Made by a program: the position numbers and the translations under genes
From: Macrostomum lignano
Taxonomy: Eukaryota
Assembly (NCBI GenBank): GCA_002269645.1
Contig: NIVC01000122.1
Span: 1 to 31,786, forward strand
Reading direction: 5' to 3'
DNA length: 31,786 nucleotides
Notes under the pieces: generated by a model
Databases searched by the model: none
Told to the model about the DNA's origin: nothing
Seen by the model: only the letters and a program-made list of their open reading frames with translations
In this document: positions 5,442 through 30,329 of the stretch, piece by piece
Numbering within the stretch: the stretch's first letter is position 1
Layout of the letters: every line of letters begins with the position of its first letter

Positions 5442-8400
5442 TCACTGAACAGAGTATTCAAGCTGTTCTTTTGAGCTTCGAAAACGATTGCGAAATTCAG
5501 TTAGAAATTTGTCGCGACGCTCCGCTGTGACTTGCATGCGCTGGTTGAGCAGGCTGACTAGCTGGTCTAGGTACTGGAATGAATGAAGATAGTAATAAAT
5601 TAATAAGTATATTCTTAATTACTTATCACTAGCTTTTTTAACAGACAGGATTGCTGCACCTAGCCATCTACAGTATAAACAACCCACCCTACCCGCCCGA
5701 TGACCCAATGACAAGTGGCAACGCTGTGGTACAATCTTCTCAGGCATATACGATGGCTCGGGGAATTGCTGAGATGTCATGGCTCGTAGGGGAATTGCTG
5801 AGATGTCATGGCTCATAGGGGAATTGCTGAGATGTCATGCTTCATAGGGGAATTGCTGAGATGTCATGGCTCATAGGGGAATTGCTGAGATGTCATGGCT
5901 CATAGGGGAATTGCTGAGATTTCATGGTTCATAGGGAAATTGCTGAGATGTCATGGCTCATAGGGGAAATTATTGAGACGTCATGGCTCATAGGGGGAAT
6001 TGCTGACATGTCATGGCTCAAAGGGGGAATTGTTGAGATGTCATGGCTCATAGGGGAATTGCTGAGATGTCATGGTTCATAGGGGAATTGCTGAGATTTC
6101 ATGGTTCATAGGGAAATTGCTGAGATGTCATGGCTCATAGGGGAATTGCTGAGATGTCATGGTTCATAGGGGAATTGCTGAGATTTCATGGTTCATAGGG
6201 AAATTGCTGAGATGTCATGGCTCATAGGGGAAATTATTGAGACGTCATGGCTCATAGGGGGAATTGCTGACATGTCATGGCTCAAAGGGGGAATTGTTGA
6301 GATGTCATGGCTCATAGAGGGAATTGCTGAGACGTCATGGCTCATAGGGGGAATTGCTGAGATGCCATGGCTCATAGGGGGGAATTGCTGAAATCGAAAT
6401 GCTGTGGCTCATGGTGGTTGCTCAGATTTTAAGGGTCAAATGGGAGTTCTTGGTAGGCCAAGCATCAAAGGGAGAGTTAGGATTAATCGTTCTTTGTTGC
6501 TTTCTCAACGGGATTGAGAAATTTAGATTGCTAGTCTTCCTATATTAACTATACTAAGAATAGTTTGTCGGTATTGTAGTGCATGCGCCCTTGTCGGTTG
6601 GCAGGGCGCGTTGCACTTTGGGGCTGGCTAGGGGGGTTGGCGGGCGTGGCAGGGTCTGGCCGGCGGCCGGGCTTTGCGCGTGCCCCTCCCCAGCCGTGCC
6701 CCTGCCCCGTGCTCAGGGCTGGTTGGCTGCGGCCAAGCCAGCTTTGGCGCGGGTGCGGCCCCTCCCCCTAGGCGGGGTTTTGATTGGCTGGCCGGCGCGG
6801 CCAGTCACTTTTCTTTGGTAGTTGCTTAGCCGGTGGGGCCGTCTGCCCCACGGTTTGGGGTATTTATTGCGTGACTCTGCGTTTTGCCCACGCCCTGCGT
6901 ACTTTTGTAGTACTTATTGTAGTACTGTATCGGTTACTCTATTTAGTGTGTACAACCTACAGAACAGTATCGAAACTAGAAGCACTCGAGAGTGTACCAT
7001 CACACCTCGAGCCGCAGCGTGAACTCTGAGTGTCACAACACTAGAAAGATTGACCTATTATCGCAGAGCGTCGTCACGCCTGCTCGTATCCATAAAAGTA
7101 CAGAGAGAGCGTCACTACGCCTGTTATATTACGTATATTATATCGTACTCGAGACTGGGCACCCAAACCGACCCGGGTTAGGACAGTATGTGTGATCAAT
7201 TTTAGCAAAAACGTCTTTCCTATAAACAGATCAATTCAAATACTTAGTCAGTCATCGTATTCAGCAACGCGACTTCTTGACATTCAAATGTTCAGTTTCA
7301 AAATTTTTACCCGTTAAAACATTTTAACCCAAATAGCTGAGTTTCATACCTCATCAGGAACAATTACTTTGCCGCTATTGTTGGTGAGTGGCACTTCCAT
7401 AATTTGTGAAGATCTGATTGCCTAGAAAATTGGACAGACAAATATATGTAAACGAGGCATACATTTACATGAATAACTGCAATGCGTAACTTTTTTATTT
7501 GTAGATAAAAACCTGCTTACCACTGTAAATCTGTCATTTTTGCCCACAACGATTCCTGATTCACGAAAACCACTGTTCAGACCGCAGATCAACTGCAAAA
7601 TCAACATGAATTGCTTGAAAGATTGAGGATCTGGGAAGCTGAGGGTGGCCCAGCAACTGAGGATCTGGGAAGCTGAGGGTGGCCCAGCAACTGAGGATCT
7701 GGAGCTGAGGGTGGCCCTGCAACTGAGGATCTGAGATGCTGAGGGTGGCCCAGCAACTGAGGATCTGGGAAGCTGAGGGTGGCCCTGCAACTGAGGATCT
7801 GAGATGCTGAGGGTGGCTCAGCAACTGAGAATCTGGGAGGCTGGGCCAGCAAATGAGGATCTGGGAAGCCGATGGTGGCACTGCAACTAAGGATCTGGGA
7901 AGCCGATGGTGGCCCTGCAACTGAGGATCTGAGATGCTGAGGGTGGCTCAGCAGCTGAGAATCTGGGAGGCTGGCCCTGCAACTGAGGATCTGAGATGCT
8001 GAGGGTGGCTCAGCAACTGAGGATCTGAGATGCTGAGGGTGGCTCAGCAACTGAGGATCTGGGAGGCTGGGCCAGCAACTGAGGATCTGGGAGGCTGGCC
8101 CTGCAACTGAGGATCTGAGAAGCTGAGGGTGGCCCTGCAACTGAGGATCTGAGAAGCTGAGGGTGGCCCTGCAAATGAGGATCTAGGAAGCTGAGGGTGG
8201 CCCAGCGACTGAGGATCTGGGAATCTGAGGGTGGCCCTGCAACTGAGGATCTGTCAAGCTGAGGGTAACCCTGCAACTTAGGATCTAGGAAGCTGAGGGT
8301 GGCCCTGCAACTGAGGATCTGGGAGGCTGGCCCAGCAACTGAGGATCTGGGAGGCTGGCCCAGCAACTGAGGATCTGGGAGGCTGGCCCTGTAACTGAGG

Positions 8401-8955
8401 ATCTGGGAAGCTGGCCCATCAACTGACACTCTGGGAGCCTGGCGCAGCAACTCGGGATCTGGGAACCGTTAGAGGCTGGCTAAGGGAGTCTAGGATCAGA
8501 AGCCAAAAAAGTTCTGAAAAGGGTAATATGACAAAGTAAAAACAAGCTTTACCAGACACCTAGCCGTTTCCATATCAGCGCATTGACAATGCAGAATGAA
8601 GGGCTCAAACTTTGCAAAGACGATGCCACCAGTTGTGACATTTCTCAAGCTGTCCTGCAACTGTTCCAGGTTAATTGGCTCATGAAGCACCAGCAGCCAG
8701 TTGCAGTTGGTCTTCCTAATATTTTCAAGCTTCTAAAACAATTTTAAGTTGATAATCAAGAATATTCAAGGTTTTAAATCTAGGATATTGAAAACAAAGA
8801 AAACACTCTTTAAAAGCTAATAGACATACCTGGTAGACTACAATTCTACCAGAACATGAGCTAGTTGTTGACAGCTTTGGATCTATGTTGATCTCATCAA
8901 TCATGTCTCTGATTGGAGAATCGATCTCTCCTTTTCGACTTTTATCTTCTGCCAT
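5442..8955 (-). CDS. TYW3: tRNA wybutosine-synthesizing protein 3 (SAM-dependent tRNA-Phe G37 methyltransferase). Exons 8955-8830, 8732-8553, 7592-7521, 7421-7350, 5573-5442; 193 aa as assembled, 5' end uncertain
   Basis: All four introns are GT-AG and phase 0. Joined protein: MAEDKSRKGEIDSPIRDMIDEINIDPKLSTTSSCSGRIVVYQ/KLENIRKTNCNWLLVLHEP...KFEPFILHCQCADMETARCL/LICGLNSGFRESGIVVGKNDRFTV/AIRSSQIMEVPLTNNSGKVIVPDE/YLDQLVSLLNQRMQVTAERRDKF...*. It contains the TYW3 motifs SRKGxID, TTSSCxGR, KFEPFxLH and SGFRxSG, colinear with human TYW3 as recalled. Confidence 0.92.
5755..6391. repeat. 29-30 bp minisatellite (GGAATTGCTGAGATGTCATGGCTCATAGGG), about 21 units, in TYW3 intron 4
   Basis: Tandem units read directly; length variation is in the G run. 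Confidence 0.95.
6576..7190. other. GC/CpG-rich block of unknown origin inside TYW3 intron 4
   Basis: Very GC-rich at 6576-6850 with GC-box-like runs and ATTGG (reverse CCAAT) at about 6783, followed by CpG-rich sequence to about 7190. No recognisable ORF or termini. Confidence 0.4.
7621..8466. repeat. About 34-bp tandem repeat (GCTGAGGGTGGCCCAGCAACTGAGGATCTGGGAA) with 29-bp deletion variants, filling most of TYW3 intron 2
   Basis: About 26 tandem units read directly between the acceptor at 7593 and the donor at 8552. Confidence 0.95.
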
Positions 8956-13006: not shown

Positions 13007-13545
13007 GAGGACGTCTTAAGTAGAACGACGGGAAACCTCGTTTCTTAGAAAAATTTAGAAGACAGGTTTTCCAAAAAATACACTACAGAAATAGGAAGTT
13101 TTCATTTCTTCAGCACAAAAATTGCTATTGCTTTTGATAGGATGCAGATCCAGTGTTCATCTTTTGATATGTTGTGCCTTTCTTATTGCTCCATCGATAT
13201 TCATTGAGCTTTTCGTTCAGAAAATTAGGATTCTATGTTAATTTTTTATTCTACGTACATTTCCACAAGTCTTGTGCCTAAAAACCATTGAAATGCACAA
13301 CTCGGCTCATTGCATGGTTTTATGAGTCTATTTTATCATTCTTAGCTGATTGTGTAACAAATACTTGTAACAGAGATGATTACAATAAAGGTGAACACAG
13401 GATCTGCCTCCTATCAAAAGCAATAGCCATTTTTGTACTGAAAAATGAAAACTTCCTATCTCCGTAGTGTATTTTTTCGGGAAAACCTGCCTTCTAAAAT
13501 TTTCTAAGAAACAAGGTTTCCCGTCCTTCTACTTAAGTCGTCCTT
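13007..13545. mobile_element. Fold-back MITE-like element with about 160-bp inverted arms
   Basis: 13007-13164 is the reverse complement of 13386-13545 with scattered mismatches (e.g. ttaagtagaa...gggaaacc...tttcttagaaaa). No TSD resolved. Confidence 0.8.
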
Positions 13546-14558: not shown

Positions 14559-14728
14559 AACAGTGATGTGATGTGAACAGTGATGTGAACAGTGATGTGA
14601 ACAGTGATGTGAACAGTGATGTGAACAGTGATGTGAACAGTGATGTGAATAGTAATGCGAACAGTGATGTGAACGGTGATGCGAACAGTGATGCGAACAG
14701 TGATGTGAACAGTGATGTGAACAGTATG
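14559..14728. repeat. 12-bp tandem repeat (GTGAACAGTGAT), about 14 units
   Basis: Read directly; generates the spurious LFTS ORF. Confidence 0.95.
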
Positions 14729-16625
14729 TGATAGTAATTACATATCAACTGCTTGTTTTACTTGTAGAGTTTCATTTCTACATACATGCAAGGGTACATC
14801 TGTGAGCTATTAATTCGTGCATATATCATGTCGCTTTGACCCTAAATCTCTTTTTAAGACTTACTAAGCATTGTGAGGCAATGCAGACAAAATCTGCTGC
14901 GTGGCCAAATGCGCTGCAGGAAAAAGCATTGCGGGCAAACCTCGGTGGGAAAAGGCAATTCGTCTGCGGGCAAATCTCGTGGACTCAAATTTATCTTAAT
15001 TTAATATTATCAATACAAGAGTTAGAAATCCGAGCGCAATTTAGAGCGCCCCTGAACCCCATTCCATCATTTTCAGCCGGACCAGGAGAATATCAGCCAG
15101 AACTGCATCGGAGGGCAGGCCCGCGGTGAACAACCGATCGATGGCGGCTGCGGACCCCCCTGGCAACGGGCCGGCCAAGAGACAACTTGGACGAATTTAG
15201 AGAAGGCACGGATGTTTCGGAGATGAGAAGAAGAATTTACAGTTGACGGGGAGGTGTCTAAAAGTATTGTGAGGGACAGAGGCCTAGGATAGGGGAGGCC
15301 GCATCTAACTCAACCAATGCGTTAAAATCCCCACTCCGTGGCAGAGCTGACTTCCCTAGCAACTAGCTAGTTTATTGCTTTTGGGCTACACAGCTCTATC
15401 AGTATCAGGGGCAGCGTCTCCTCTCAAAACTTTGCGAATGCATACCGTTGACAGGCAATGCAGGAGAACACTCTGGGCCTTGGGGCAATAACACCGGTGA
15501 GCGCGGAATCAACTCTCTCCTGTTAAGCGGTCGGCCTATAGGCAAAATTAATAAAGCCCAGGTCCACTCCGCACCAGGGCTACCATGTAGGTGCGGCCTT
15601 AATGATGTGCTGGACAGGTTGAGGTAACGTTGCAGTTGCGTGCGGTAGACGTTACCATAGAAATATAAGGTACATTTATGGTACGCGCCTCTGAGAAGTA
15701 GGGTTAGGATAGAATGAGAAGAAGGGTAAGAAGTACGAGTAGGATAAGAACTAGTTACCAGCCAATGTGAGACCTCCATTTGAGACAACCACCTCCTTCT
15801 TAAGCGTGCCATTCAATTTGTCGGTTCTCTGTAGTCACAGCGGTAAACGAGAATAAAAACGCCGAATACACCTTTTACTGTTTTAAATACTGGGTCAAAC
15901 TGAAAGAGTCGTAACAGGTGTTTTTATATATTTGCAGGCGACACAGCAATAATGGCAACCCTAGTGTATCTGAACGGAACGATTCCACCATCATTTTATA
16001 CATGAAATGCACACTTTTCACAATTCAGCTCTTTCCTAGCACTTTTCGATTGAGAACTCGCTTAAAGCATCCGAGAAGAATCCCTTTAATCTTTGGCTGT
16101 AGCAGGCTTGAGTCCCGTCTCAACAGCGAGATTCTTCACAATCGACTGCTTGCAGTAGGGCCATCATTGTTTTTGTATATTCCACTTCTGCCCTTCACTT
16201 ATGCTATCAAATCATATTTTTAGCGATTAAAACTGGCATGTCAGCATCTATAACTGAACTCGTATAGATATGAGTATACAGCACAATTTAACTAAGAATG
16301 TCTTCAGTATACTGCAATAATGGCATTAAACGACCTGCCCTCAACCGACCTTAAAGAGCTATCAAAACATATTTTAGTGAATAAAATATATTTAATCCCC
16401 TTAGATTTACCATGGAAAGAATACCATGGAATAAAGCAATAGCTCACGACAAGTCATGCAAACAATGCTCTAAGAACCAATCTACTAGTTTTGAGTGCGA
16501 ACCTTGGCATGTACAGTACCTTGCGGGAAGAAGGGCTCAGCAAGTCAGAGAAATATCTACTTGGTTGGTCACCACAAACCAATAAAAATAGCAGTGGGAA
16601 GGAAGCCTTTATTATTTGGTCCTCC

Positions 16626-16639
16626 GTTTCCATGGTAAC
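16626..16639 (+). promoter_or_regulatory. X-box (RFX-binding)-like motif GTTTCCATGGTAAC upstream of lectin 1
   Basis: Matches the GTNNCC-AT-GGNAAC consensus, 110 nt before the ATG at 16750. Counterparts lie upstream of both paralogs. Confidence 0.6.
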
Positions 16640-16749
16640 GAAAAACGGATAAATGTTGTCTGATATACGCATGTGAGAAAACTGCAAAACACAATTCGTT
16701 CTCATCTGCAAGTCAATAGCTGCCTCAAACTTCTAACTTTAACCTAGCA

Positions 16750-19700
16750 ATGAGCCGGGTTCTCAGCTTCCTATCGGCAGTGCTCATGTCTTCTGCTCTG
16801 GTGAGCAGCGCGGCCAGATTCGAGCTCGGTGCCGCAATCAACCGAACTCTCCCAGTCGCGTTTGAAGTCGGGCACGTCACCCAGGCGCGTCACTGCTCTC
16901 AGCTGTGCTCACAAATAGCCGAGTGCTTCGGATTCTACTCGGTGCAGAACAAGGCGGGACCCTGCGGACTGTTCAACGCGACCGCCTTCTACTGGAAGAG
17001 CTCGTGGACAGCCGCCGGATCGGAGCAGCAGTTTGACGTCTTCGTGATTGATGTCGGTAAGTGTCGGCTCGTGCTCATCACTGACCTAAATGGATCTCAG
17101 CCCCTCAGTAGGGTATGCAATTGTCTTCAACGGGCACAGTACTTGAGTGCCCGGGTAGTAAACGCCAAGGATCTACGAGAATTGCCCACAGATGACATTT
17201 TTACGCTCGGAGAATCTTCCTTATTGTATTGACAGCATGCCGCACAGGTAACTTATAGAGTACATGTGGTTTGCATCCTTGCCTAGAGCAGACGGCTTTC
17301 TAACCAGCCTACACCGTCACTTCAAAGAAGTGAGGAGTTTGGAAGTGATTGGCAATTAATGTCGCATTTCAGAAGTTTGAAAAAACCTATAAAGCTGCTC
17401 CTATCGCGTCCGTGAAACGAAACAGATGCATTGGTAAGCTGAGCGGCTTTTTCAGGCAATCACTGAAGAGGTTGCTATGAAGCTCGGAGCGTATTATGAT
17501 TGAACTAGGCCTGTGAAACTACACGACGAAGTTTTCTGCACGTTATGTACGCATTCTGGATTTAGAGGGCGTGAGGGGCTCCACCAGATGATGAAGGACG
17601 CTATTGTCTTTTTCCGAGGAGGTTGGGACGGACTGCGTCGACTTGGTCATGTCAGGTAAAGAGAAGTAAACCAACGGTAACAACCTATGCACCGGAAAGC
17701 AGATTAAGATTGTATGCCTTTAGCTGCGGTGCGCCATTATTTAAGCTTGTTGTCTCGTCTCGTGAAGCAAAATTCTCTTTGGAGCAGTGGTAAAGTACAA
17801 CGCAAGTTCTAGGTAATATCACCTGAACGGCATGGCATGATGGCTCGGATTTCTAGGAGGTTGAATCCATCACGCAAGTAGACAAATCATTGCGTCTGTG
17901 CTAACACTGTTGTCACGAATCTATTGAACCGAGGTATTGCGATCGGCGACATCCAATGTATTGATGGTCATTAAAGACCCGAGTAGTCCTGAGGTACACA
18001 AAGTATATTTCGCCAACTAAGAAACGGCAATTGTCAAACGCTCTGACCATTGCTTCTCTCCAGAAAATTTCGACATCTCTTCTCTTTTTTCTCTTCATTA
18101 AAGTGCACGGTGAAAACCCAGAGTGTCCTTTCGTTACAGTTTGCACGGCAAGTTCGTCGGAATTTGGATTGGTGCATTCTGTCATCCAGAGAGGTGGCAA
18201 AACGCACAACAGGTTTTAGGGATTTTTAGACCACCCAGCAGATCGCTGCCATCAACTGGCCACTAACAGAAACTGGGTAATTTTTATGGATGGGCCTAAT
18301 TTTCACTGTAACTCCAAGAGTACTATCGGGACAGAAGCGAATTGGCTGAGGATGAGCAAGTTTCAGTAAAAGGAGTGACACTTGAGCAGTTGAGATTCAT
18401 GTTACTCGAGAGAGAGGCGTCACTGAACCTGTTGGCAGGGCAATCACTGCTAACAATTGTGCTGGCTAGAGATGCGCTGCAACCGATTGTTTGGATTGTG
18501 TTTGCAGCGACATCAGTTTAAAGAGTTGAAATTTTGTAAATTTTGAGGCTTTCAATTTTTGACTTGAAAATATAATTTATAATTTATAATTTTATGTAAA
18601 TAAAAGCTAAAGTCGTTTCTTCTCTACTGGCCAATGGTTCCATAACAGCATGATAAATTAAGTTGTCTAATGACTTACCTTCCAGAGTCAACTCAAACCA
18701 TGGAGTATTCAATATAGCTTTTTGCGATTGAATTCAGCCAAATTGTAAAACCTTTCAGCCAATGGAGATTTTGCCTTCACTTCAGCTGTTTCTACCATAG
18801 ACTATTTAGGACACACCGGTTAGCTGCGTGAGAAAAGCACTGACTGAAAGTCTTGGCTGAAGTCTAGGTTTTTCAGTTGGGCTGAAATAATTTACAGGAG
18901 CGGGAAAGCTAGCCGGTGTGTCCTAAATAGTCTATGGTAGAAGCCACCGAAGTGAAGGAAAAATCTTCATTGGCTGAAAGGTTTTGCAGTTTGGCTGAAT
19001 TCAATCGCAAAAAGCTATACTTGGGACGGGAAACTACAGACGCTAGAGGCCAGCTATTAATAACTTAATCCTCGAAAAAACATTACTTGGATAGTTTCTA
19101 CCTTGTAGTCAGTGATAGTTTGTGTCTGTGGTACATGTTGCATGCTACATTCGTGGTTAGCCTTATCTTAGGCTTGGCCATAGAAGAATGCTTTTAAACG
19201 AGCCTCAAACTTTGTTCACAATGAATTGCGAGTCTTCTGAGTGATTAAGTTGTCCTTCACTCCAACACTTGGCCATAAAACTCTATAAGCTAGGGTCTCG
19301 TTTTTCATGTCCACTGCTCCAAATAGCATGACAAAGGCATTATCTGTGGTCCTGTCCGCAAAATCCAGCAGGAAGCACAGATATATCTAGATGGACCACT
19401 TCAGCCGCCTGGCCGCAGCGCAAAAACCCCGGGGTAAAGACTATAAACTGCGCCGCTCCAGATATATTCTGGTTTAGAAGTTCAATGTTTTGCTTGGGTT
19501 TTGACCTTGCTGGCTAGGCATGAAATATGTAATCGGTGCAGTGCTCTAAAATGTATATGATGCCATTGTTTTACAGACGAGCAGAAGCTGAGCTTGACGA
19601 GCTGCACCCAGAGTTCCGTTGCTTTTGGCGGCGTCTGCACCAGAGCCATCGATAACAACACCAACCAAGCATGGAGCTCTGGCTCATGCACCCATACTGA

Positions 19701-19977
19701 AGGAGGAATCCCGAACCAGTGGTGGGAGGCCCAGCTTCTGCGGCAGTCCATTGTTTCTCACGTAGTCATCTACAACAGGCAGAACGCCTCACATCGGTTG
19801 AACAACTTTGAGCTGCTTGTGGACGGCGTCCAGTGCCGCAGTGTCAACGTGTCGGTGCCATTCTCTGTTGGCAACTTCACCTGCCAGATGGCCGGATCCA
19901 GCATTCGAGTCCAGAGTCGCCGTAGCGATGCTCTCACGCTGTGCGAGTTCGAGGCATACGGGAATTACCTTCCTTGA
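16750..19977 (+). CDS. Secreted PAN/Apple + F-type lectin (FTP / F5-F8 type C-like) protein, paralog 1. Exons 16750-17056 and 19577-19977; 235 aa
   Basis: Signal peptide MSRVLSFLSAVLMSSALVSSA; PAN core CSQLCSQIAECFGF...C. Phase-1 intron G|GTAAGT...TTACAG|AC. FTLD motifs RAIDNN, CTHT, NQWW, YNR, LTLCEFEAYG. Sugar motif altered to H-x27-RQNASHR. Confidence 0.88.
18713..19019. mobile_element. Palindromic MITE, 307 bp, with about 113-bp inverted arms, in the lectin 1 intron
   Basis: 18713-18825 is the near-perfect reverse complement of 18907-19019, with TA at both outer ends. Confidence 0.85.
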
Positions 19978-20612
19978 CTGGTTGAGTGATTCAGTGAGTG
20001 TGTTAATGAGCGCGAGTAAGTGACAAGGCAATGATCGATTACGATACGAATTCAGACTTTGAGCTAAACTTTAATTAAGTAATCAAACCTTTCTCTGAGC
20101 TGAACTAGTTGACATTCCGAGTAGGAAATTATTGATGTAAGTACTTTGTAATTCCACCATTTCGACAAATTGGAACTTTTTCTGAAAAATGTTTGATACA
20201 TTTTGTTTGCAACAAACCTTTTCTGTTTCCGAAGAATACACATTTCCAATCCGAATTGAAAAAGGATTTAGCTCCTAGCAAACGAGTTGCTGATATTGCC
20301 AATATTCCTATTTATCACAAATATCGCTTGTGCTTTTTATCCAGCACTGCACTTTCGATTTAGAAATCTTAAACAAATAGAAACATTTGTTTTCATCGAT
20401 GGCTTGACTGCAAATTTTTAAATACTTGCAATGATATTCCAGAATAGTTGCAGTCGTCCTGATCTCAAAATCTGCAAAGGTTCTACTCCCAGTAGCATGC
20501 ATGCAGTCCAGAAATAAGAAAAATTTTTTTGGAATGTCCCTCGACCCAGCTGAGCTGGCCGCTTATCAAGACGCGACTTAAAATGTGAAACCAGGAAAGC
20601 CAAATCTGGCCC

Positions 20613-21110
20613 TTCAGCCCGATTCTCTGGAACTTGGTCATGAACGAGTTGCTCAGCAGCCCGCTTCCGGATCCGGTTCAGGAAATCGGCTACACGTGGA
20701 CCATCACCCTCGGTTCTTGGACGCCTCATCCACCTTGCCGAACGCTGAGCACTCAGCTGCGGTCTCACGCTCCCTGTTCGAGTCTAAACCGTGGCTATCA
20801 TGCTCACCAGCTAATGATACTGCAGGATGGAACCGCTCTCCATCTGAGGCAAACCCGTTGACATAGAGAAACAAACCAGATGTCTGGGCGTCACCATTGA
20901 CCATTAGGTTGCGCTGGACCCCCACATGTCCAAACTAAGCCCGCAAAGCTTTCGTGACTCTAGTGCAGATCCACGGAGCTTTCGGTGCCACCTGGGGCCT
21001 CACCCCCTGATTTGATGGATTTACACTTGCCATTGTGAGACCAGCCATCTTCCCTGCCGTTTTTATTTGGAAAAGGGATTATTGAAACTCTTAACAAGGT
21101 GCAAGGCCGC
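20613..21110 (+). mobile_element. Degenerate non-LTR retrotransposon reverse-transcriptase fragment (R1/Loa-like)
   Basis: Frameshifted motifs FSPILWNLVMNELL..LPD.VQEIGY (decayed YADD), KQTRCLGVTIDH-RLRWTPH, FGATWGLTP, IVRPAI, LNKVQ. Confidence 0.75.
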
Positions 21111-21710
21111 ACTCGCTGAGCTCCAACGGGGTGTCAATAAAGTATAATCCAAGACACCTGACCATGAGTTAGGTGAGTGGCCACTTCGATCATAATTGTA
21201 ATATGCAAATACAGCAGGAAAATATACTGCAGCTATACATTTTACATTTTTCAGTTGTGACAGATGTGACAGCTGCATTACTAACGACTCTAATTATGCA
21301 ATACTAGCGAGAAAAAAACAGACAGCAGATGCATTTTAATTGCTCAAGCATATACTCTATCCTGGGAGAATAAAATATCTGATAGCCTACAATTCAGTAT
21401 ATAAATGCTCTGTAAAATGATGGAGTATTAACTGCTCCAATGAAAAAAATTATTGGTAGAGAGTGCAACCCCAACTCAAATTTTTAACGCAGATCAGCCT
21501 CAAGCGGAATTATATTGCTTTTAGCCACAAAATTTTAATGAGAAAATTCGTCGCAACACATGTACAATGTCAATACAACTCCGTGACCCATGTACAGTAC
21601 CTTGCGGGAAGAAGGGTTCAGCAAGTCAGAGAAATATCTACTTATTTATTCACCGCAAACCAATAGAAATAGCAGTGGGAAGGAAGCCTTTATTTTTTGC
21701 ATGGTCCTCA

Positions 21711-21724
21711 GTTTCCATGGTAGC
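21711..21724 (+). promoter_or_regulatory. X-box-like motif GTTTCCATGGTAGC upstream of lectin 2
   Basis: One mismatch to the lectin 1 motif, 136 nt before the ATG at 21861, within duplicated upstream sequence. Confidence 0.5.
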
Positions 21725-21860
21725 GAAAAGAGATTTGCGTACATCCCAAAGCGGATAAATGTTGTCTGATATACGCATGCGAGAAACTGAAAAAATAGAA
21801 TAATTCGCTGTGGCCTGCAAGTCAATAGCTCCGTTTCAAACTTCTAATTGTAACCTAGCA

Positions 21861-23962
21861 ATGAGCCGGATTCTCAGCTTCCTATCGGCAGTGCTCATGT
21901 CTTCTGCTCTGGTGAGCAGCGCGGCCAGATTCGAGCTCGGTGCCGCAGTCAACCGAACTCTCCCAGTCGCGTTTGAAGTCGCTCAAAGCTTCAACCAGCG
22001 TCACTGCTCTCAGCTGTGCTCACAAATAGCCGAGTGCTTCGGATTCTACTCGGTGCAGAACAAGGCGGGACCCTGCGGACTGTTCAATGCGACCGCCTTC
22101 TACTGGAAGAGCTCGTGGACAGCCGCCGGATCGGAGCAGCAGTTTGACGTCTTCGTGATTGATGGCAGTAAGTATCAATCAGCTTCTTTAAACCTGCATG
22201 ATTGCCAGAGGCACACCATGTGATGATCGCATTAAATGATCACAAAAGGTTGTTGCGGTTGCCTGCAGTGTGCTTAGAGTGGCCCTTATTAGGAATTTAA
22301 AGTAGGCCCGCAAGAGTCTCAAGGTTCAATGTGCATGCATAGCTAGCATGTCTTTTCCGCAGAGACGCAAGAGCTTTTTAAATTTGTTTCTGTACCTTTT
22401 TTCCTCAATCCCCTATCTGTCCAGTATCCCCTATCTAACAGTAGGTCCCCTAATATCTGTCTGTCTTGGCAACGCTCCTGAGATAATCTGATCTGAAAAA
22501 CTGATACAACACTACACTCGTATTATTGGCATCTTAGCTAGGCACAAGGAGGACCGTGTCCCCCCCGATAGACTGGCAAACAGTACGATGCCCCCCTGAC
22601 AACAAATTTATGTAGCGTTCCTGTTCTCCCTAGTGCTGGCAGTGGCACCCTACAATGGCGCCCTAGAGTTGGCGCCTCTGGTAAATGCGCCAATTAAAAA
22701 TTATCCTCCTTTCGAAGTGAGCTGAAAAACTATCTCTATTAATTATATATAAAGCAGTACTGCATGGGCTCTTTCCATTTGTTTCGCGGTGGCCAGTGCT
22801 GAAACAGTATAGCGTTTGTTTTATAGACGTTTTATCAGGCTCATTTCAGCAATAAGGATTAATAATGGCAAGGAGGATGGGAGACAGAAATGTGCACAGA
22901 TCCCCTAGAAGACATTGACTTGTTGATTCTTAGCAGATCTTGTCTATCTTCTTGGGTTGCTGCGCAAGTAATTGCAAGAACGTCCAAGATCTTTGCTATA
23001 ATAATACTTAGATAAACTTACCAGGTCTGGGCGACTTGCTACATCGTACAAGATCTTAGCTTTTAAATCTTTTTATAGCTTCGAATCGCATATTTTTTTA
23101 ATTTATTGTCCTATTTTCTCATAAAATAAAATATAGTTCAATTAGAACACTTTAGCCAAATGAAAAACGAAAAAACGTACCTCCCATCTTAGAAGATCCT
23201 GCAAGAACCGAGCAGATTGAGAAGATCTGCTAAGAATGGCACAGAGACAAGATCTGCTAAGTTTGAGAAACAGAATGTCCAAGCATGGGAAGCAGTCGCA
23301 CGTATTCGCATATACAGTATCAGTGTAGCTCTTGATTATCTATTCACATAATGACACAGCTGGATATACTTGTAACCCTCTAGACAGGGTTGACCCTGGT
23401 GCGTGTCTTGATGGCACCATGATGAGCCATGTTCGAGCAGAAAATAGCCCAAAAATGTTTGCTTATTTCTGGATTGTTATGCTACTGGAAGTAGTAGCTA
23501 GCAGATTGTCAGATCAGGAAGATTTCTAACTATCCCGGAATATCAATTATTTCAGACTGGACAGTACGGCAGCTCTCCATCTCCAACTGCAGCCAGAGCT
23601 CAGTGCTATACTCGGCAGTTTGTAGTCGAACTATCGATGGAAACAATAATCCAAGTTATTCTGCAGGATCCTGCACGCACACGGACCAATTTCCCAATCA
23701 ATGGTGGGAGGCTGAATTGCTTCAACCGTCAATTGTCACGCACGTGGTCCTGTACAACCGCCAGGATTGCTGTGTCGAGCGGCTTAACAACTTCTCCTTG
23801 TTGGTGAACGATGCCGTATGCGCCCAGGTAAGCCGATCGACACCATTCTCAGTTGGCAACTTCTCCTGGCTGGGCGCTGGCAGCAGAATTCGGATTGAGA
23901 ATAACCTGAACGATGCGCTTTGCATTTGCGAGTTTGAAGCGTTCGGCATCTATTTTCCTTGA
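21861..23962 (+). CDS. Secreted PAN/Apple + F-type lectin, paralog 2. Exons 21861-22167 and 23556-23962; 237 aa
   Basis: Exon 1 is nearly identical to paralog 1. Phase-1 intron A|GTAAGT...TTTCAG|AC. Canonical fucose-binding motif H-x26-RQDCCVER, plus TIDGN and LCICEFEAFG. Confidence 0.9.
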
Positions 23963-25070
23963 GAATTCTGAGTCGACAAATGTAAGAAATGCAGGATAGG
24001 AAGTTGTCAGTTTTTAGTACCTTCTGGTTTTCTGAATTGCAAACAAAGTATGTGCTTTTAACATTACATCGACGGATAAAGAAGTCATACATGTACGTCG
24101 TCTGAACGTCGATGTAATTTAAAAGTACATAAATGTCATCGACGTAGGATTGCTGTAGAGGATTACTGCAAACAGAGAATAGGCTTCTGGGGCGTACAAC
24201 AAAGTCTCTGCTGCATGAAACCCCTGTAGTAAAAAATCAAGTTAAAACTTCTGTTCCTTTGCTATACTATATAGTCACGCAATCTCGTTAATTTTTCTCG
24301 ATAGAGATGGCTAGATGTTGTAGCTGGATAGGATCGTTTCTTAGAAGTTATTGTTTTTTAAGGAAACAAATCCACACGCTGCATGGTCATGTTTTGAAAG
24401 GTTAACTATTAGTTTTCCATTCTTTTGAACTTATTATAGGCAATCTCTGTAGCATGAGTTCTGATCAAATTTTTGACGATCTTCAACTTAAAAATGATAT
24501 TGTGATGTACTTCATGGAGGTTAGTTATACTGGTCTGCAGACTTTGTTCAACGATCCCTTGACTGTCGCTCTGATTTAATTAAAAGACTAAAGGCCAATT
24601 AAAAGACTAAAAGACAAATTACATGTTGTTATTTTTACATGTAATCTTATGAACCTCTAGCTAATCATATCTAACTTAATCTATAGCCAAGTTAATCGAA
24701 GTTTGTTTTACTCATAGTACATCTCAAAATGAAAAGGTTGGATTATTTACCGAAGCCTTTTTGAAGCGTACAACATGTATGATTTGTCTTTTTTCACTCG
24801 CCCTTCTTTCATGTTCTAGCATTGTCTTGTGACGCGTAAAGACAAACTAGAAGTTCTTTTTTCGTCAGAGCATGTTACAATAGCTGCAGGCAATTGGCAG
24901 TTTAAATTGAATTTTTATTTAATATTTTCCTTTATAACGAAAATATCGACGATTTGTTTCAATATTCTAATGAATAAATGCAACCGTAAAAGCTAAGAAG
25001 TAAATAAACGAGCCATCTGACACGCCCTGCTCTATGACCTTGCATGCGAGGCTGCGTTGGTAGTGGTAGT

Positions 25071-26935
<1,865 letters not shown>

Positions 26936-28564
26936 GTTGTTGTTGTTATTGTTGTTAACTTTAGTCGAAATACGTTGCATTTTTCCGTTACCGTTCATAT
27001 GCCTACTGAACATGTACACGAGCTATTTGACCATTTTTCTGATATTATTCTTATCACATAACAGCCTTTGGGTCGTAAAGCATGGACATCAGGGAGGACG
27101 TCCATGACTTGGAAGCATCTATTCATCTCACAGCCAGGAATGAGGCAATTCTGCTCATTCCGCTCACTCCTGAGCACATACAAGCGCGCCAATGCTGTAC
27201 GCAGACGTACTCATAAATACACTCAGGGTGTTCAGCGGCCCTGACTTTCAAATCATCAACTTTCTAACCCAGCTTGAGAGTTGGCCACAGTCCCCAGGTC
27301 AAATTTTTGTGCACATATTGCCGCGCACGGGATGGAAACAGGTATAGATCGAGGTTGTAGGGCGAGAGTCAGACGCGTTTTATCGCTGGGCTGCTATCTG
27401 CTCCGCTTCATATGCCTAACTTTTGCATAACATGGCACGGACGTATGGTAACTTCCTGGCACGTATGTCTAATGTACTTTTACTACTGATGTATCACGTA
27501 TAGCCGGTAGCGTATACAGTATTATCTACTGCAAGTAGCGTACACTGTATGTGTATCTCAGGTCTGAGTTATTATTTGGCACTATTGACTATCTCTAACA
27601 TTTATTAATTACTCCTATGGAGAATGTCTCTCAGTCAGGGCGTTTCACAGGATCAGAGAGTCACGGCTGTGATACAATGACCTTCTCTGATAAATTCTCC
27701 CAATGACCTAAGGAAATGAATAAAGTCTGTTTCAAAAGCTGGGAAAGTATTGGGAAAGTAAAGTACTCGATCGCTTTAATTTTAGCGATCGAGTTGAAAA
27801 GTCGACAAAAAGTTTTTTCAAATGTTTGGAATGTTGGAACGTTGTTTTTGACCTCTCAGTTTCTGGCCTTCTATTTATACTACATTTTGGAAAAGATTCT
27901 AACAATTTTTTTGTAAAATGTGATTTTAATAGCTCGTACATTACATTATAAAAGATTTAGCGGAAATTTGAAATACAGTAATTTCTAAGAAAGCAGAAGC
28001 TATACTGTACTTCCAAGAAAGAGAGCAGTATAACTATTTATAACTTTGTTGGATGCTTGACTGCCTCAACAGCGTCGCGATGTGTTTCAAAACCTTCTCT
28101 CGTTGTTATACTAATTACTTGTAGTTAGTGTTTACTGTTAACGAAAACTGTATTTGGCCAAGCAATATTCAAACACGCATAATTTATTGACAGGATCCTG
28201 CGGAAAATTCCCTTAGTACATTTTTCATTTATCCCAGATTTTAAGCGAGAAAATACACGGTGACAATAATTGTGGAATAATATCGGGAATAATGAGTAAT
28301 ATTGGTAATATTCCAAAAGAACAGGACAAATATAACAAATTTCAACCAGTTTTTCTCAACAAATTTCAACTTTCGTCAAACCGGTAAAAACCTGAAGTAC
28401 TTGTATAAAAAATTGTAAACTCGACATGTCGAAAAATTTTTGCTTAGACAAAGGTTTGATTACTCAATTAGAGCTTCTCTCAAAGTCTGAATTCTTATCG
28501 CAATCGATTTTTGACTCGTCAACTCGCTAAATAATTAACACACGCACTGAATCACTCGAACCAG

Positions 28565-29614
28565 TCAAGGAAGGTAATTCCCGTATGCCTCGAACTCGCA
28601 CAGCGTGAGAGCATCGCTACGGCGACTCTGGACTCGAATCCTGGATCCGGCCATCTGGCAGGTGAAGTTGCCAACAGAGAACGGCACCGACACGCTGACA
28701 CTGCGGCACTGGACGCCGTCCACAAGCAGCTCAAAGTTGTTCAACCGCTCTGCACAGCAATCCTGCCTGTTGTAGATGACTACGTGAGAAACAATGGACT
28801 GCCGCAGAAGCTGGGCCTCCCACCACTGGTTCGGGATTTCGCCAGTATGACTGCATGAACCAGACCTCCACGCTTGGTTCGTGTTGCCATCGATGGCTCT
28901 GGTGCAGACGCCGCGGTAACCAAGGGAACTCTGAGAACATCTTGTCAAGCTCAGCTTCTTTTTGTCTGCAAAAAGACAGCATGTATATAAATTTAAGAAC
29001 GCTGCACCAATTGACACATCCATATTTCGTCCCTAGCAAACAAGGCCAAGACCCAAGCAAAACAGGAAGAGTTTTCTTGGCACATGTTGTTCTCGTTGTC
29101 ATGTTCTTGTTCTTGTAGTTGGACTTCAAAACAGCGCAACTGCTGAAGTAGTTTTTGCGACGCAATAACCGTTAAGTTGAAGAAAAACGCTTACGTTACT
29201 GAGAGGCTGAGCTCCATGCTCTTACCACTACACCTAGGTTTGTTTTGCATGTAGGCTAGTGATGAGCACGAGCCGACACTTACCGACATCAACCACGAAG
29301 ATGTCAAACTGATGCTCCGATCCGGCGGATGTCCACGAGCTCTTCCAGTAGAAGGCGGTCGCGTTGAACAGTCCGCAGGGTCCCGCCTTGTTCTGCACCG
29401 AGTAGAATCCGAAGCACTCGGCTATTTGTGAGCACAGCTGAGAGCAGTGACGCTGGTTGAAGCTGTGCGCGACTTCAAACGCGACTGGGTGAGTTCGGTT
29501 GACTGCGGCACCGAGCTGGAGCTCGAATCTGGCCGCGCTGCTCACCAGAGCAGAAGAAACGATAGCTGTGATGAGGCTCAGAAGCTGAGCAGAGGCTCTC
29601 ATTGAAGACTGCAT
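28565..29614 (-). CDS. Secreted PAN/Apple + F-type lectin, paralog 3 (inverted). Exons 29614 (or 29602)-29284 and 28965-28565; 243 or 239 aa
   Basis: Signal peptide and PAN core as in the paralogs. Phase-1 318-nt intron G|GTAAGT...TTGCAG|AC. Canonical H-x26-RQDCCAER, plus AIDGN and LTLCEFEAYG. Confidence 0.9.
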
Positions 29615-29712
29615 TTCCTACACAGTGAGGGAGATATGGTTTCCTAATTGTGCAGGCGCGCGTTTCCAACCGGTAGTTTAAACCTTTTCGTGTATGCTCA
29701 AAGGCTTTTTGT

Positions 29713-29726
29713 TTTACCATAGCAAC
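29713..29726 (-). promoter_or_regulatory. X-box-like motif GTTGCTATGGTAAA upstream of lectin 3
   Basis: Strong GTTGCT half-site plus ATGGTAA, 110 nt before the ATG at 29602, the same spacing as paralog 1 despite dissimilar surrounding sequence. Confidence 0.5.
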
Positions 29727-30329
29727 GAAATGCGATAGCATGCCTAGGAGTGAAAATTTCTTTGCCTTTCGAGTAGCACAGCTTGTGGCTGCTGAGCCTC
29801 CGTTGGCAAACAAAATTTTTGCGCAGCTTCTCTTCTTTCAAGGACTTTTACTAATTGCCTCGTCTGCCTTTTTTCCAGAGAGCTCTTTTTCTCCTGCAGG
29901 CAAAGTTTTTTGTAAGTGTCGGTAAACTGCATATTTTAACTTGACAACGGAATAGGTAGAATTTCCTCACTGGTTGTGGGAAAATTTCGCAGAAGGTCGC
30001 GGTATGCTTTTACATCGACACAATGGCAATTATTTTTTACCATTATCTTATAATTGCTCCCCATGTGGTTTCCCGATTTCATCATGTGAATTTTTTTTGC
30101 CTTAGAGTGAATTGGGTGGCATAATGACATCTGCGTTGAGCATAATACAGAAACATATAATTACAATGCCCTTCTAAAATTATGAAATATATTGCATATT
30201 TTTGCAATCTCAGTCACATACTAAATAATCTACTATTGCGTCGTGGCGGCCCCAAATATTCTGCCAATATTGATTTTCGAAGCAGTAAAAGTAGTGGATC
30301 CGTCCATCAGTGATTGACTTTCCATTAGC

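What the first reader, a model, noticed from the sequence alone, without database searches (positions are those of the whole stretch)
16508..29730. Cluster of secreted PAN + F-type lectins diversified specifically in ligand-binding loops
Seen: three 2-exon genes, one exon per domain, with a phase-1 junction. Between paralogs 1 and 3 the FTLD framework is almost identical (3 nt differences in the last ~170 nt). Changes cluster in loops: SVAFG/SLGYR, DNN/DGN, THTEGG/SHTGE, RQNASHR/RQDCCAER. Paralog 2 has a much more divergent FTLD on a near-identical PAN exon. Established: in eel agglutinin AAA, loops (CDRs) around the His-Arg-Arg triad set fucose specificity, and oyster sperm bindin is an F-lectin diversified by recombination and selection. 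Inference: a rapidly diversifying glycan-recognition repertoire (immunity, mucus/adhesion or gamete recognition). This is the best candidate for an undescribed system in this window.
Basis: partly seen in the sequence, partly recalled or inferred. Interest (0 to 1): 0.75.

Follow-up and report, generated by a model that had tools for sequence, protein, structure and literature searches.

The report
Flatworm PAN-like plus F-lectin gene cluster
Three neighbouring genes of the flatworm Macrostomum lignano encode small secreted proteins made of a PAN/apple-like module and a fucose-type (F-type) lectin domain; the apparent "loop-only" diversification is mostly a by-product of gene conversion between the copies, so this is an uncharacterised but fairly ordinary lineage-specific lectin family.

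Summary
There are three intact two-exon genes: g1 + 16750-17056/19577-19977, g2 + 21861-22167/23556-23962, g3 - 29614-29284/28965-28565. All use GT-AG introns with a phase-1 junction. Exon 1 encodes a signal peptide plus a 4-Cys PAN/apple-like module. Exon 2 encodes an F-type lectin domain (FTLD), confirmed by sequence and by fold.

The window is Macrostomum lignano. The architecture belongs to a family seen only in that species. UniProt names its members automatically ("Apple/FTP domain-containing"), and I found no paper on it.

The interpretation (selective diversification of ligand-binding loops) is not supported.
- Amino-acid differences between g1 and g3 do cluster in loops (p=6e-5), but so do synonymous differences.
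- The "identical framework" is a roughly 300-nt gene-conversion tract that runs past the stop codon.
- pN/pS is below 1 in loops (0.56) and in framework (0.35).
- The g2-g3 comparison and family-wide entropy show no excess variation in loops.
- Exon 1 is homogenised among all three genes.

Two residual oddities concern g1. It has two short, highly divergent islands inside converted tracts: the CDR4 fucose motif (DCCAE to NASH) and a PAN loop. It has also gained three N-glycosylation sequons (P about 0.001). Interest is low to moderate.

The parts
16508..16749 (+). g1 upstream block (putative promoter/5'UTR), homologous to the g2 upstream block 21589-21860
   Evidence: Self-BLAST: 16508-17065 vs 21589-22176, 87.8%. 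Upstream part: 28 substitutions in 242 ungapped positions, plus indels. g3 upstream is unrelated.
16750..17056 (+). g1 exon 1: signal peptide plus 4-Cys PAN/apple-like module, ending in phase 1 before GTAAGT
   Evidence: PAN evidence.
16870..16887 (+). g1-specific divergent island in the PAN-like module (GHVTQA vs AHSFNQ/AQSFNQ) inside an otherwise near-identical exon. It sits in the family's most variable N-domain stretch.
   Evidence: Three-way alignment and site patterns. Entropy string. No donor sequence in the window.
19577..19977 (+). g1 exon 2: F-type lectin domain with degenerate fucose motif (RQNASHR) and cation motif (AIDNN); stop at 19975-19977
19708..20007 (+). Gene-conversion tract shared with g3 (28838-28534): about 98.5% identical outside the CDR4 island, and it extends about 30 nt past the stop codon
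   Evidence: synonymous 3/61 vs noncoding flanks 56/230, p=5e-4; longest identical run 81 nt, permutation p<1e-4.
19783..19794 (+). CDR4 island in g1 (NASH replacing DCCAE of g3 at 28762-28748). It loses the Asp81 and Cys82-Cys83 equivalents, is 1 aa shorter, and creates an NAS sequon.
   Evidence: about 57% identity in the patch. No donor in the window. The same NASHR is in UniProt A0A1I8J772.
21861..22167 (+). g2 exon 1: signal peptide plus PAN-like module
   Evidence: 94.8% identical to g1 exon 1.
23556..23962 (+). g2 exon 2: divergent FTLD with canonical H...RQDCCVER and TIDGN motifs
   Evidence: dS vs g1 and g3 is saturated; pN about 0.28-0.30.
29284..29614 (-). g3 exon 1: a different signal peptide plus PAN-like module (6-nt AGCTCC duplication gives an extra LQ)
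28565..28965 (-). g3 exon 2: canonical FTLD (His150, Arg177, Asp179, Cys180-181, Arg184; AIDGN)
25060..27100 (.). Spacer between the tail-to-tail genes g2 and g3: (AGT)n microsatellite 25060-25449 and a frameshifted retroelement remnant (RNase H, minus strand, 25662-26352)

Best explanation
The region is a tandem/inverted cluster of three paralogous Macrostomum lignano genes.

Product. Each gene encodes a secreted protein of about 210 aa (mature form). It consists of an N-terminal 4-Cys PAN/apple-like module (exon 1, together with the signal peptide) and a C-terminal F-type lectin domain (exon 2).

Binding sites.
- g2 and g3 keep the complete fucose-recognition motif (His-X26-Arg-X-Asp-Cys-Cys-X2-Arg) and the cation motif (hhDGN). 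They are most likely Ca-stabilised lectins that bind alpha-L-fucose or similar sugars.
- The PAN-like module probably supplies a second binding or oligomerisation surface, so the protein would act as a soluble cross-linker, agglutinin or opsonin. This step is inferred.
- g1 has lost the Asp and the vicinal Cys-Cys. Its CDR4 is one residue shorter, it has DNN in place of DGN, and it has gained three N-glycosylation sequons. It is most likely a paralog with switched specificity, a masked binding face, or no fucose binding. This step is also inferred.

Evolution.
- The mature part of exon 1 is homogenised among all three genes.
- g1 shares its upstream region and signal peptide with g2.
- g1 shares the start of intron 1, exon 2 and the 3' flank with g3.
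- A recent tract of about 300 nt (19708-20007) has erased divergence in the 3' two-thirds of the g1 and g3 FTLD exons.
- The 'variable loops' mostly lie in the unconverted 5' third, whose synonymous divergence equals that of the flanking non-coding DNA.

The FTLD exon evolves under purifying selection (pN/pS about 0.3-0.4 overall).
For: Gene models, splice sites and phase.

FTLD identity:
- Pfam F5_F8_type_C_2, E 1e-12.
- PDB sequence hits: FBP32 4e-32, SpX-1, AAA.
- AF2 model with FTLD pLDDT above 90.
- Foldseek top hits: 3cqo, 1k12 (TM 0.73, rmsd 2.1 A), 2j1r, 3le0.
- Motif mapping to AAA His52/Arg79/Asp81/Cys82-83/Arg86 and to the Asp38-Gly39-Asn40 cation motif.

PAN-like identity:
- The N-domain profile hits multi-PAN proteins at whole-library E 4e-13 to 6e-9. 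The matched stretches lie in Pfam PAN_1/PAN_4 domains.
- hhalign aligns all four Cys with a PAN_1 repeat (E 6e-5, probability 65%).
- UniProt names paralogs 'Apple/CW domain-containing'.

Species and family: the closest protein is M. lignano A0A1I8J772, a mis-fused model of g1 exon 2 plus g2. All two-domain relatives are from M. lignano.

Mosaic structure and conversion:
- Self-BLAST blocks and alignments.
- g1-g3 exon 2: 5' part 81% identical, pS 0.35. 3' part 95% identical, or 98.5% outside the CDR4 island, pS 0.05. Fisher p=4e-4.
- 3' tract versus non-coding flanks p=5e-4; 5' part versus flanks p=0.25; longest identical run 81 nt, permutation p<1e-4.
- g2 exon 1 dS is 0.04, against saturated dS in its exon 2.

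No loop-specific selection.
Against: - There is no expression, protein or binding evidence. Sugar specificity is inferred from motif conservation alone.
- Pfam's own PAN models do not reach E<=10 on any family member. The isolated N-domain folds poorly (pLDDT 47).
- Conversion does not by itself explain why two short, highly divergent islands (CDR4 and the PAN loop) survive inside converted tracts of g1.
- It also does not explain why N-domain differences between g1 and g3 are 15 nonsynonymous to 0 synonymous (p=0.026). Some selection on specific patches is therefore not excluded.
- With three sequences, the pN/pS estimates for individual loops rest on 1-6 changes each.
Confidence: 0.75

Rival explanations
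1. The paralogs are a rapidly diversifying glycan-recognition repertoire, in which positive selection acts specifically on the ligand-binding loops while the framework is conserved (as in eel fucolectin isoforms or oyster bindin).
For: - Amino-acid differences between g1 and g3 are enriched in CDR1, CDR2, the His loop and CDR4 (14/39 vs 6/93, p=5.6e-5).
- CDR1 alone has 4 nonsynonymous to 1 synonymous change (pN/pS 1.5).
- The CDR4 island persists inside an otherwise homogenised tract.
- Family members differ in the primary motif: DCCAER, DCCVER, DCCADR, DMSPER, NCCPES, NASHR.
- CDR1 and the post-His loop are the most variable FTLD loops in the family (entropy 1.55-1.58), as in eel isoforms (PMC5712786).
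Against: - Synonymous changes co-cluster with the amino-acid changes (pS 0.31 vs 0.08).
- pN/pS is below 1 for loops overall (0.56) and does not differ clearly from framework (0.35).
- Within the unconverted 5' part, loops give 0.47 and framework 0.26, on 9 vs 4 nonsynonymous changes.
- g2-g3 shows no loop enrichment (p=1; pN 0.27 vs 0.28).
- Family entropy is 1.22 in loops vs 1.19 in framework, p=0.9.
- The identical 'framework' extends into the 3'UTR and has far lower silent divergence than the flanks.
Confidence: 0.15
2. g1 is a decaying copy, a lectin pseudogene in the making. Its motif losses would be neutral degeneration, and the ORF would be kept open only because gene conversion keeps re-copying intact sequence from g2 and g3.
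For: - g1 has lost the Asp81 and Cys82-Cys83 equivalents, shortened CDR4, and changed the cation-motif Gly.
- Where g2 can polarise the FTLD differences, 9 are g1-derived and 3 are g3-derived.
Against: - The ORF is intact, with canonical splice sites and an even number of Cys.
- The His and both Arg of the triad are retained.
- The same NASHR allele, with one other amino-acid difference, is in the UniProt M. lignano protein A0A1I8J772.
- Loss of the vicinal Cys-Cys with a one-residue-shorter CDR4 also occurs in the C-terminal FTLD of FBP32 (alignment; PMC5712786) and in the paralog P0060 (DMS).
- A gain of three N-glycosylation sequons is unlikely under random mutation (P about 0.001).
- The 9:3 asymmetry is not significant.
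Confidence: 0.1
3. The three 'paralogs' are an assembly artefact: collapsed or duplicated haplotypes or homeologues of the partly polyploid M. lignano genome, not a real local cluster.
For: M. lignano assemblies are known, from general knowledge, to contain duplicated regions. The UniProt model differs from the window by a few residues.
Against: - The copies have unrelated introns of 2520, 1388 and 318 nt.
- They have different flanks and different orientation (g3 is inverted).
- g3 has a different signal peptide.
- g2's FTLD exon is only 59-61% identical to the others.
Haplotype duplicates would be collinear and near-identical throughout.
Confidence: 0.02

Closest known systems
Single-domain and binary fish F-type lectins (Anguilla anguilla agglutinin AAA, PDB 1K12; striped bass MsaFBP32, PDB 3CQO)
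   Same: - Same fold. These are the top Foldseek and sequence hits.
- g2 and g3 carry the same motifs: His-X26-Arg-X-Asp-Cys-Cys-X2-Arg and hhDGN.
- The equivalents of disulfides Cys50-Cys146 and Cys108-Cys124 are present in g3.
- CDR1 is short, as in FBP32.
- g1's loss of the vicinal Cys-Cys with a one-residue-shorter CDR4 parallels the C-terminal FTLD of FBP32.
   Different: - An N-terminal PAN/apple-like module replaces a lone or tandem FTLD.
- A family-specific Cys pair brackets CDR1 (C120...C131 in g3).
- g1 also lacks the Asp and the cation-motif Gly.
- No binding data exist.
- The host is a flatworm.
Oyster (Crassostrea gigas) sperm bindin F-lectin repeats
   Same: Both are FTLD genes in which recombination creates mosaic variants, and in which some copies depart from the His-Arg-Arg motif (PMC5712786; compare P0040 and g1).
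   Different: - Bindin shows positive selection at eight pocket sites, recombination in an intron that lies inside each FTLD, and alternative splicing of 1-5 repeats.
- Here each FTLD is a single exon.
- Recombination here homogenises sequence (conversion tracts), and pN/pS is below 1.
- Gamete expression is unknown.
Nematode secreted C-type lectin + CW/PAN-3 proteins (CTLD class IV); plant G-type lectin + PAN receptor ectodomains
   Same: All combine a carbohydrate-recognition domain with a PAN-superfamily module in secreted or extracellular proteins that belong to lineage-specific expansions (PMC5297725).
   Different: The lectin domain is of a different kind (C-type or bulb-type rather than F-type), the domain order differs, and there is no homology outside the PAN module.
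UniProt M. lignano entries A0A1I8J772, A0A1I8IT94, A0A1I8J533, A0A1I8FP23, A0A1I8H7G8 and others ('FTP/Apple/CW domain-containing protein')
   Same: They belong to the same family and species. A0A1I8J772 contains g1 exon 2 and g2 almost verbatim.
   Different: - They are automatic, partly wrong models. A0A1I8J772 fuses g1 exon 2, an intergenic ORF and g2.
- None of them corresponds to g3.
- None has a functional annotation or a publication.

Membership tests
F-type lectin domain (FTLD / fucolectin) | F-type jelly-roll beta-barrel fold | tested here: met
   AF2 model of g3 has FTLD pLDDT 90-97. Foldseek best hits are 3cqo, 1k12 (TMt 0.73, rmsd 2.1), 2j1r and 3le0, all at probability 1.00.
F-type lectin domain (FTLD / fucolectin) | Fucose-binding sequence motif H-X26-R-X-D-X4-R/K, with vicinal Cys-Cys in canonical members | tested here: met
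   g3 has H150...R177-Q-D-C-C-A-E-R184, and g2 has H...RQDCCVER, with AAA spacing (motif from PMC5712786 and PMC5297725). The motif is NOT met in g1: RQNASHR has Asp replaced by Asn, no Cys-Cys, a segment one residue shorter, and His-Arg spacing one residue longer.
F-type lectin domain (FTLD / fucolectin) | Cation-binding motif hhDGx after 3-10 helix h3 | tested here: met
   g3 has AIDGN and g2 has TIDGN, aligned to AAA A36-I-D38-G-N40. g1 has AIDNN (Gly to Asn), as does paralog P0060 (AMDNN).
F-type lectin domain (FTLD / fucolectin) | Binding of alpha-L-fucose or fucosylated glycans | not testable with these tools
   Needs recombinant protein and glycan arrays or haemagglutination inhibition.
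PAN/apple module (Pfam clan PAN) | Significant match to a curated PAN-family HMM (PAN_1, PAN_2, PAN_3, PAN_4) | tested here: not met
   No PAN family hit at E<=1 for g1-g3, nor at E<=10 for four paralogs and the isolated N-domain.
PAN/apple module (Pfam clan PAN) | Conserved 4-6 Cys core (C-x3-C-x5/6-C ... C) homologous to PAN domains | tested here: met
   - The N-domain profile hits proteins made of PAN_1/PAN_4 repeats (P0020 4e-13, P0021 7e-12, P0023 2.5e-9, P0025 6.5e-9).
- hhalign aligns all four Cys with a PAN_1 repeat of a Cystoisospora 'PAN domain protein' (E 6e-5, probability 65%).
- UniProt rules call paralogs 'Apple' or 'CW' domain proteins.
PAN/apple module (Pfam clan PAN) | Fold: an alpha-helix packed on an antiparallel beta-sheet and tied by disulfides | tested here: inconclusive
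   The full-length model gives the order beta-alpha-beta-beta-alpha-beta at pLDDT about 75. The isolated-domain model is poor (pLDDT 47). Foldseek output was dominated by the FTLD, so no PAN structure match could be read.
Diversifying F-lectin repertoire (oyster bindin / eel isoform type) | Excess nonsynonymous change (dN/dS>1) at sites around the binding pocket relative to the framework | tested here: not met
   pN/pS in loops vs framework is 0.56 vs 0.35 (g1-g3), 0.33 vs 0.38 (g2-g3) and 0.38 vs 0.40 (g1-g2). There is no amino-acid enrichment in loops for g2-g3 (p=1). Family entropy is 1.22 vs 1.19. Power is low, with three DNA sequences.
Diversifying F-lectin repertoire (oyster bindin / eel isoform type) | Recombination between copies | tested here: met
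   Mosaic homology blocks and heterogeneous silent divergence. Here, however, recombination acts mainly to homogenise the copies.
Diversifying F-lectin repertoire (oyster bindin / eel isoform type) | Expression in gametes, serum or mucus, with a recognition role | not testable with these tools
   No expression data were reachable.

The most novel reading that the evidence does not exclude
Gene conversion continually homogenises these paralogs, while selection keeps a few short specificity-determining patches divergent. The patches would be the CDR4 fucose motif and the hypervariable beta1-alpha loop of the PAN-like module. In g1, selection would also have added three N-glycans on or near the binding face. 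The cluster would then be part of a Macrostomum-specific recognition repertoire, immune or reproductive, built from PAN and F-lectin modules. g1 would be a glycan-masked or non-fucose-binding specificity variant.
Probability: 0.15. Interest if true: 0.55.

Novelty: new variant of a known kind. Interest (0 to 1): 0.3.

Why it matters
F-type lectins are a well-studied recognition family with roles in immunity, fertilisation and bacterial virulence. They are known to occur in mosaic architectures.

A PAN/apple-like plus FTLD architecture is not mentioned in the two F-lectin reviews I read, nor in any full-text hit. Here it appears as a multigene family restricted to one flatworm. M. lignano is a genetically tractable model (transgenesis, RNAi), so the family could be tested directly for a role in mucosal immunity, feeding or reproduction.

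The practical lesson is methodological. In tandem families, 'identical framework plus variable loops' can be produced by gene-conversion tracts. It should not be read as positive selection unless synonymous sites and flanking DNA are checked.

The finding also flags a mis-fused public gene model.

Tried and rejected
- Pfam scans of the N-domain for PAN families gave no hit, even at E<=10.
- AF2 on the isolated N-domain with six sequences gave an unusable model (pLDDT 47), so no fold search was run on it.
- Foldseek with the full-length model returned only FTLD, discoidin and CBM32 matches in the listed rows.
- I looked in the window for a donor of the two g1 islands, on both strands and with up to 3 mismatches. 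None was found. Templated mutation from a local sequence is therefore not supported; a donor elsewhere in the genome could not be tested.
- I tried to fetch further genomic copies or transcripts by exact protein. No family-wide codon analysis was therefore possible.
- Literature searches for Macrostomum or Platyhelminthes with F-type lectin, fucolectin or apple domain found nothing relevant. Bishnoi et al. 2015, the FTLD architecture survey, is not held.
- g1-g2 upstream divergence versus exon-1 synonymous divergence was not significant (p=0.13). Conversion of exon 1 between g1 and g2 therefore rests on the contrast with exon 2, not on that test.
- The excess of nonsynonymous change in the N-domain (15:0 for g1-g3, p=0.026) shrinks to 17:2 on the three-taxon tree. 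It is dominated by one 18-nt patch that may be a single event, so I do not claim positive selection there.
- The assembly-artefact and pseudogene readings were considered and given low weight (see rivals).

Full report
WHAT IS THERE

The window is eukaryotic DNA with about 40-48% GC in this region. ORF listing and direct reading give three two-exon genes, which I assembled and translated:
- g1, + strand: 16750-17056 / 19577-19977, 235 aa.
- g2, + strand: 21861-22167 / 23556-23962, 237 aa.
- g3, - strand: 29614-29284 / 28965-28565, 242 aa.

All three have GTAAGT donors and (Y)nCAG acceptors, and the junction splits a codon after its first base (phase 1). tblastn of the three proteins against the window finds exactly three copies of each exon and no degenerate extras. 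g1 and g2 are head-to-tail. g3 is inverted, tail-to-tail with g2. Between g2 and g3 lies a 4.6-kb spacer with an (AGT)n microsatellite of about 130 copies and a frameshifted retroelement RNase H remnant.

DOMAINS

The exon-2 product is an F-type lectin domain.
- Pfam matches only the generic F5_F8_type_C_2 and F5_F8_type_C models.
- phmmer against PDB sequences hits striped bass FBP32 (4e-32), S. pneumoniae SpX-1, eel agglutinin AAA and lectinolysin.
- An AlphaFold2 model of g3 has pLDDT 90-97 over this domain.
- Foldseek ranks 3cqo, 1k12 (TM 0.73, rmsd 2.1 A), 2j1r and 3le0 first.

I aligned the domain to AAA and used the residue roles given in the F-lectin review PMC5712786.
- g3 has His150, Arg177, Asp179, Cys180-Cys181 and Arg184, which correspond to AAA His52, Arg79, Asp81, Cys82-83 and Arg86.
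- g3 has AIDGN, the hhDGx cation motif.
- g3 has the Cys equivalents of AAA Cys50-146 and Cys108-124. g2 has the first pair but lacks the Cys124 equivalent (Trp) and carries an extra Cys (LCIC).
- g2 has the same fucose and cation motifs.

The exon-1 product is a hydrophobic signal peptide followed by a module of about 85 aa with the pattern C-x3-C-x5-C-x12-C.
- Pfam's PAN models do not detect it.
- A profile of six family N-domains searched against 1.84 billion representative proteins finds, beyond family members, proteins built of PAN_1/PAN_4 repeats at whole-library E 4e-13 to 6e-9.
- hhalign puts all four Cys in register with a PAN_1 repeat.
- UniProt names paralogs 'Apple' or 'CW domain-containing'.
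- In the full-length model the module has the order beta-alpha-beta-beta-alpha-beta at pLDDT about 75. The isolated-domain model failed.

I therefore call the module PAN/apple-like, with the fold unconfirmed.

ORIGIN AND FAMILY

The nearest database protein is Macrostomum lignano A0A1I8J772. It is a wrong model that fuses g1 exon 2, an intergenic ORF (20634-20861) and g2. It reproduces g1's unusual NASHR motif.

All proteins that combine this N-domain with an FTLD are from M. lignano, and they fall into at least eight clusters at under 50% identity.

Family members vary in the primary motif:
- DCCAER, DCCVER, DCCADR and DCCAGR.
- DMSPER together with DNN (P0060).
- One lineage (P0040) has lost His, Arg and Arg altogether (SCSNT ... 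NNDNCCPES).

I found no publication on the family. FTLD motifs in 'planaria' were noted long ago (PMC5712786).

TESTING 'DIVERSIFIED SPECIFICALLY IN LOOPS'

Of the differing columns, 14 of 39 fall in CDR1, the cation motif plus CDR2, the His loop and CDR4, against 6 of 93 in the rest (p=5.6e-5). The DNA tells a different story.

1. Self-BLAST and alignments show a mosaic.
   - g1 and g2 share about 240 nt upstream and the signal peptide.
   - The mature part of exon 1 is near-identical in all three genes.
   - g1 and g3 share the first 30 nt of intron 1, the last 90 nt of the intron, exon 2 and about 170 nt of 3' flank.
   - g2's exon 2 is only 59-61% identical to the others, with saturated dS, although its exon 1 has dS about 0.04.

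2. Identity varies sharply along the g1-g3 exon-2 block.

   | Segment | Identity |
   |---|---|
   | intron end | 74% |
   | first 129 nt of the exon | 81% |
   | remaining 272 nt of the exon | 95% (98.5% outside an 18-nt patch) |
   | first 30 nt after the stop | 94% |
   | rest of the 3' flank | 72% |

3. Synonymous divergence follows the same pattern.
   - It is 10/28 sites in the 5' part and 3/61 in the 3' part (p=4e-4).
   - The 3' value is far below the non-coding flanks (56/230, p=5e-4). The 5' value is not (p=0.25).
   - The longest identical run is 81 nt (permutation p<1e-4).
   - The 'conserved framework' is therefore a recent conversion tract (about 19708-20007 in g1, 28838-28534 in g3), not evidence of constraint. 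The 'variable loops' CDR1, CDR2 and the His loop simply lie in the older, unconverted segment.

4. pN/pS is 0.56 in loops and 0.35 in framework for g1-g3, and 0.47 versus 0.26 within the unconverted part. For g2-g3 it is 0.33 versus 0.38, with no amino-acid enrichment in loops (15/39 versus 37/93, p=1).

5. Over eight family members, column entropy is 1.22 in loops and 1.19 in framework (p=0.9). CDR1 (1.58) and the His loop (1.55) are variable, and CDR4 (0.77) is the most conserved.

WHAT REMAINS ODD

g1 carries two short, strongly divergent islands inside otherwise homogenised sequence. Both are derived in g1, because g2 and g3 agree with each other at these sites.
- 19783-19794 (NASH for DCCAE). 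This removes the Asp and the vicinal disulfide and shortens CDR4 by one residue.
- 16870-16887 (GHVTQA for AHSFNQ). This lies in the family's most variable N-domain stretch.

No donor exists in the window.

g1's derived changes also create three new N-glycosylation sequons:
- N129-N-T in the cation motif;
- N172-A-S in CDR4;
- N193-V-S, near the top of a strand by alignment to AAA Gly112 (its position on the binding face is inferred).

In a simulation of 17 random amino-acid replacements on the g3 FTLD, three or more gains occurred in 0.1% of trials. This test was post hoc.

N-domain differences between g1 and g3 are 15 nonsynonymous to 0 synonymous (p=0.026). On the three-taxon tree this becomes 17:2, and it is dominated by the one patch.

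These points keep open a minority reading in which selection maintains a few specificity patches against conversion.

MECHANISM (SHOWN VERSUS INFERRED)

Shown:
- gene structure;
- FTLD fold and motifs;
- PAN-like homology;
- mosaic conversion;
- overall purifying selection on the FTLD.

Inferred:
- secretion, from the N-terminal hydrophobic leader and the absence of any other hydrophobic segment;
- fucose or related-sugar binding by g2 and g3;
- altered or lost binding in g1;
- a cross-linking, agglutinin-like role that uses the PAN-like module as a second interaction surface.

The biological context (gut or mucosal defence, food capture, reproduction) is unknown. UEA-I, a lectin specific for alpha1,2-fucose, gave only background staining on M. 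lignano (PMC4890501). That weakly favours exogenous ligands, or non-H-type endogenous ligands.

COMPARISON AND VERDICT

g2 and g3 meet the tested defining features of F-type lectins. g1 fails the sequence motifs but keeps the fold and the basic triad. The loss of the Cys-Cys in g1 has a precedent in the C-terminal FTLD of FBP32.

The architecture parallels the nematode CTLD+CW(PAN) proteins (PMC5297725) but has not, to my knowledge, been described for FTLDs.

Unlike oyster bindin, there is no sign of pocket-centred positive selection, and recombination here homogenises the copies.

This is a real, intact, lineage-specific lectin cluster: a new variant of a known kind. Its interest is modest, and the headline inference is largely explained by gene conversion.

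Noticed in passing
window 19577-19977 (g1 exon 2): codons for N129, N172, N193: g1-derived substitutions create three new N-glycosylation sequons (NNT, NAS, NVS) in the FTLD. Two lie in the cation motif and in CDR4. Random-replacement simulation gives P(>=3 gains) of about 0.001. g1 and g2 each have 6 sequons; g3 has 3.
   Followed up: partly
window 19577-23962 vs UniProt A0A1I8J772 (P0001): The public M. lignano gene model fuses g1 exon 2, an intergenic ORF (20634-20861) and g2 into one 368-aa protein. Its g2 exon-1 part carries g3-like residues (ELQL, TSAG). This hints at allelic or assembly variation caused by conversion.
   Followed up: partly
window 18713-19019 (g1 intron): A 307-bp near-perfect palindrome (arms about 77% complementary over the whole length), MITE-like, inside the 2.5-kb intron of g1.
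   Followed up: no
window 25060-25449 and 25662-26352 (-): An (AGT)n microsatellite of about 130 copies, followed by a frameshifted retroelement remnant with RNase H matches (Pfam E 1e-6 and 3e-5). Both lie in the spacer between g2 and g3.
   Followed up: partly
window 5760-6391 and 7624-8465: Two minisatellite arrays: a 29-nt unit x 21 copies, and a 34-nt unit x 24 copies with higher-order 96/130-nt periodicity. They are upstream of the cluster, and no coding signal was recognised.
   Followed up: no
window 13008-13164 vs 13544-13387; 14568-14731: A 157-nt inverted repeat pair (90.6% identical, about 220 nt apart) and a 12-nt tandem repeat x 14. These are probably transposon termini and a microsatellite.
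   Followed up: no
family members P0040/P0062/P0063 and P0060/P0022 (M. lignano): One paralog lineage has lost the whole His-Arg-Arg triad (SCSNT ... NNDNCCPES). Another has DNN plus DMS in place of DGN plus DCC. The family therefore includes members that are unlikely to bind fucose in the canonical way.
   Followed up: partly
g3 residues C120 and C131 (window about 28938-28903, minus strand) and the equivalents in all family members: A family-specific Cys pair (C-x10-C) brackets CDR1. It is absent from AAA and FBP32. It probably forms an extra disulfide that constrains the CDR1 loop (inferred, not modelled at the distance level).
   Followed up: no
window 20432-20528 vs 23545-23451: A 99-nt inverted similarity (79%) between the g1-g2 intergenic region and the very end of the g2 intron, just upstream of g2 exon 2. 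It may be a repeat-element fragment.
   Followed up: no
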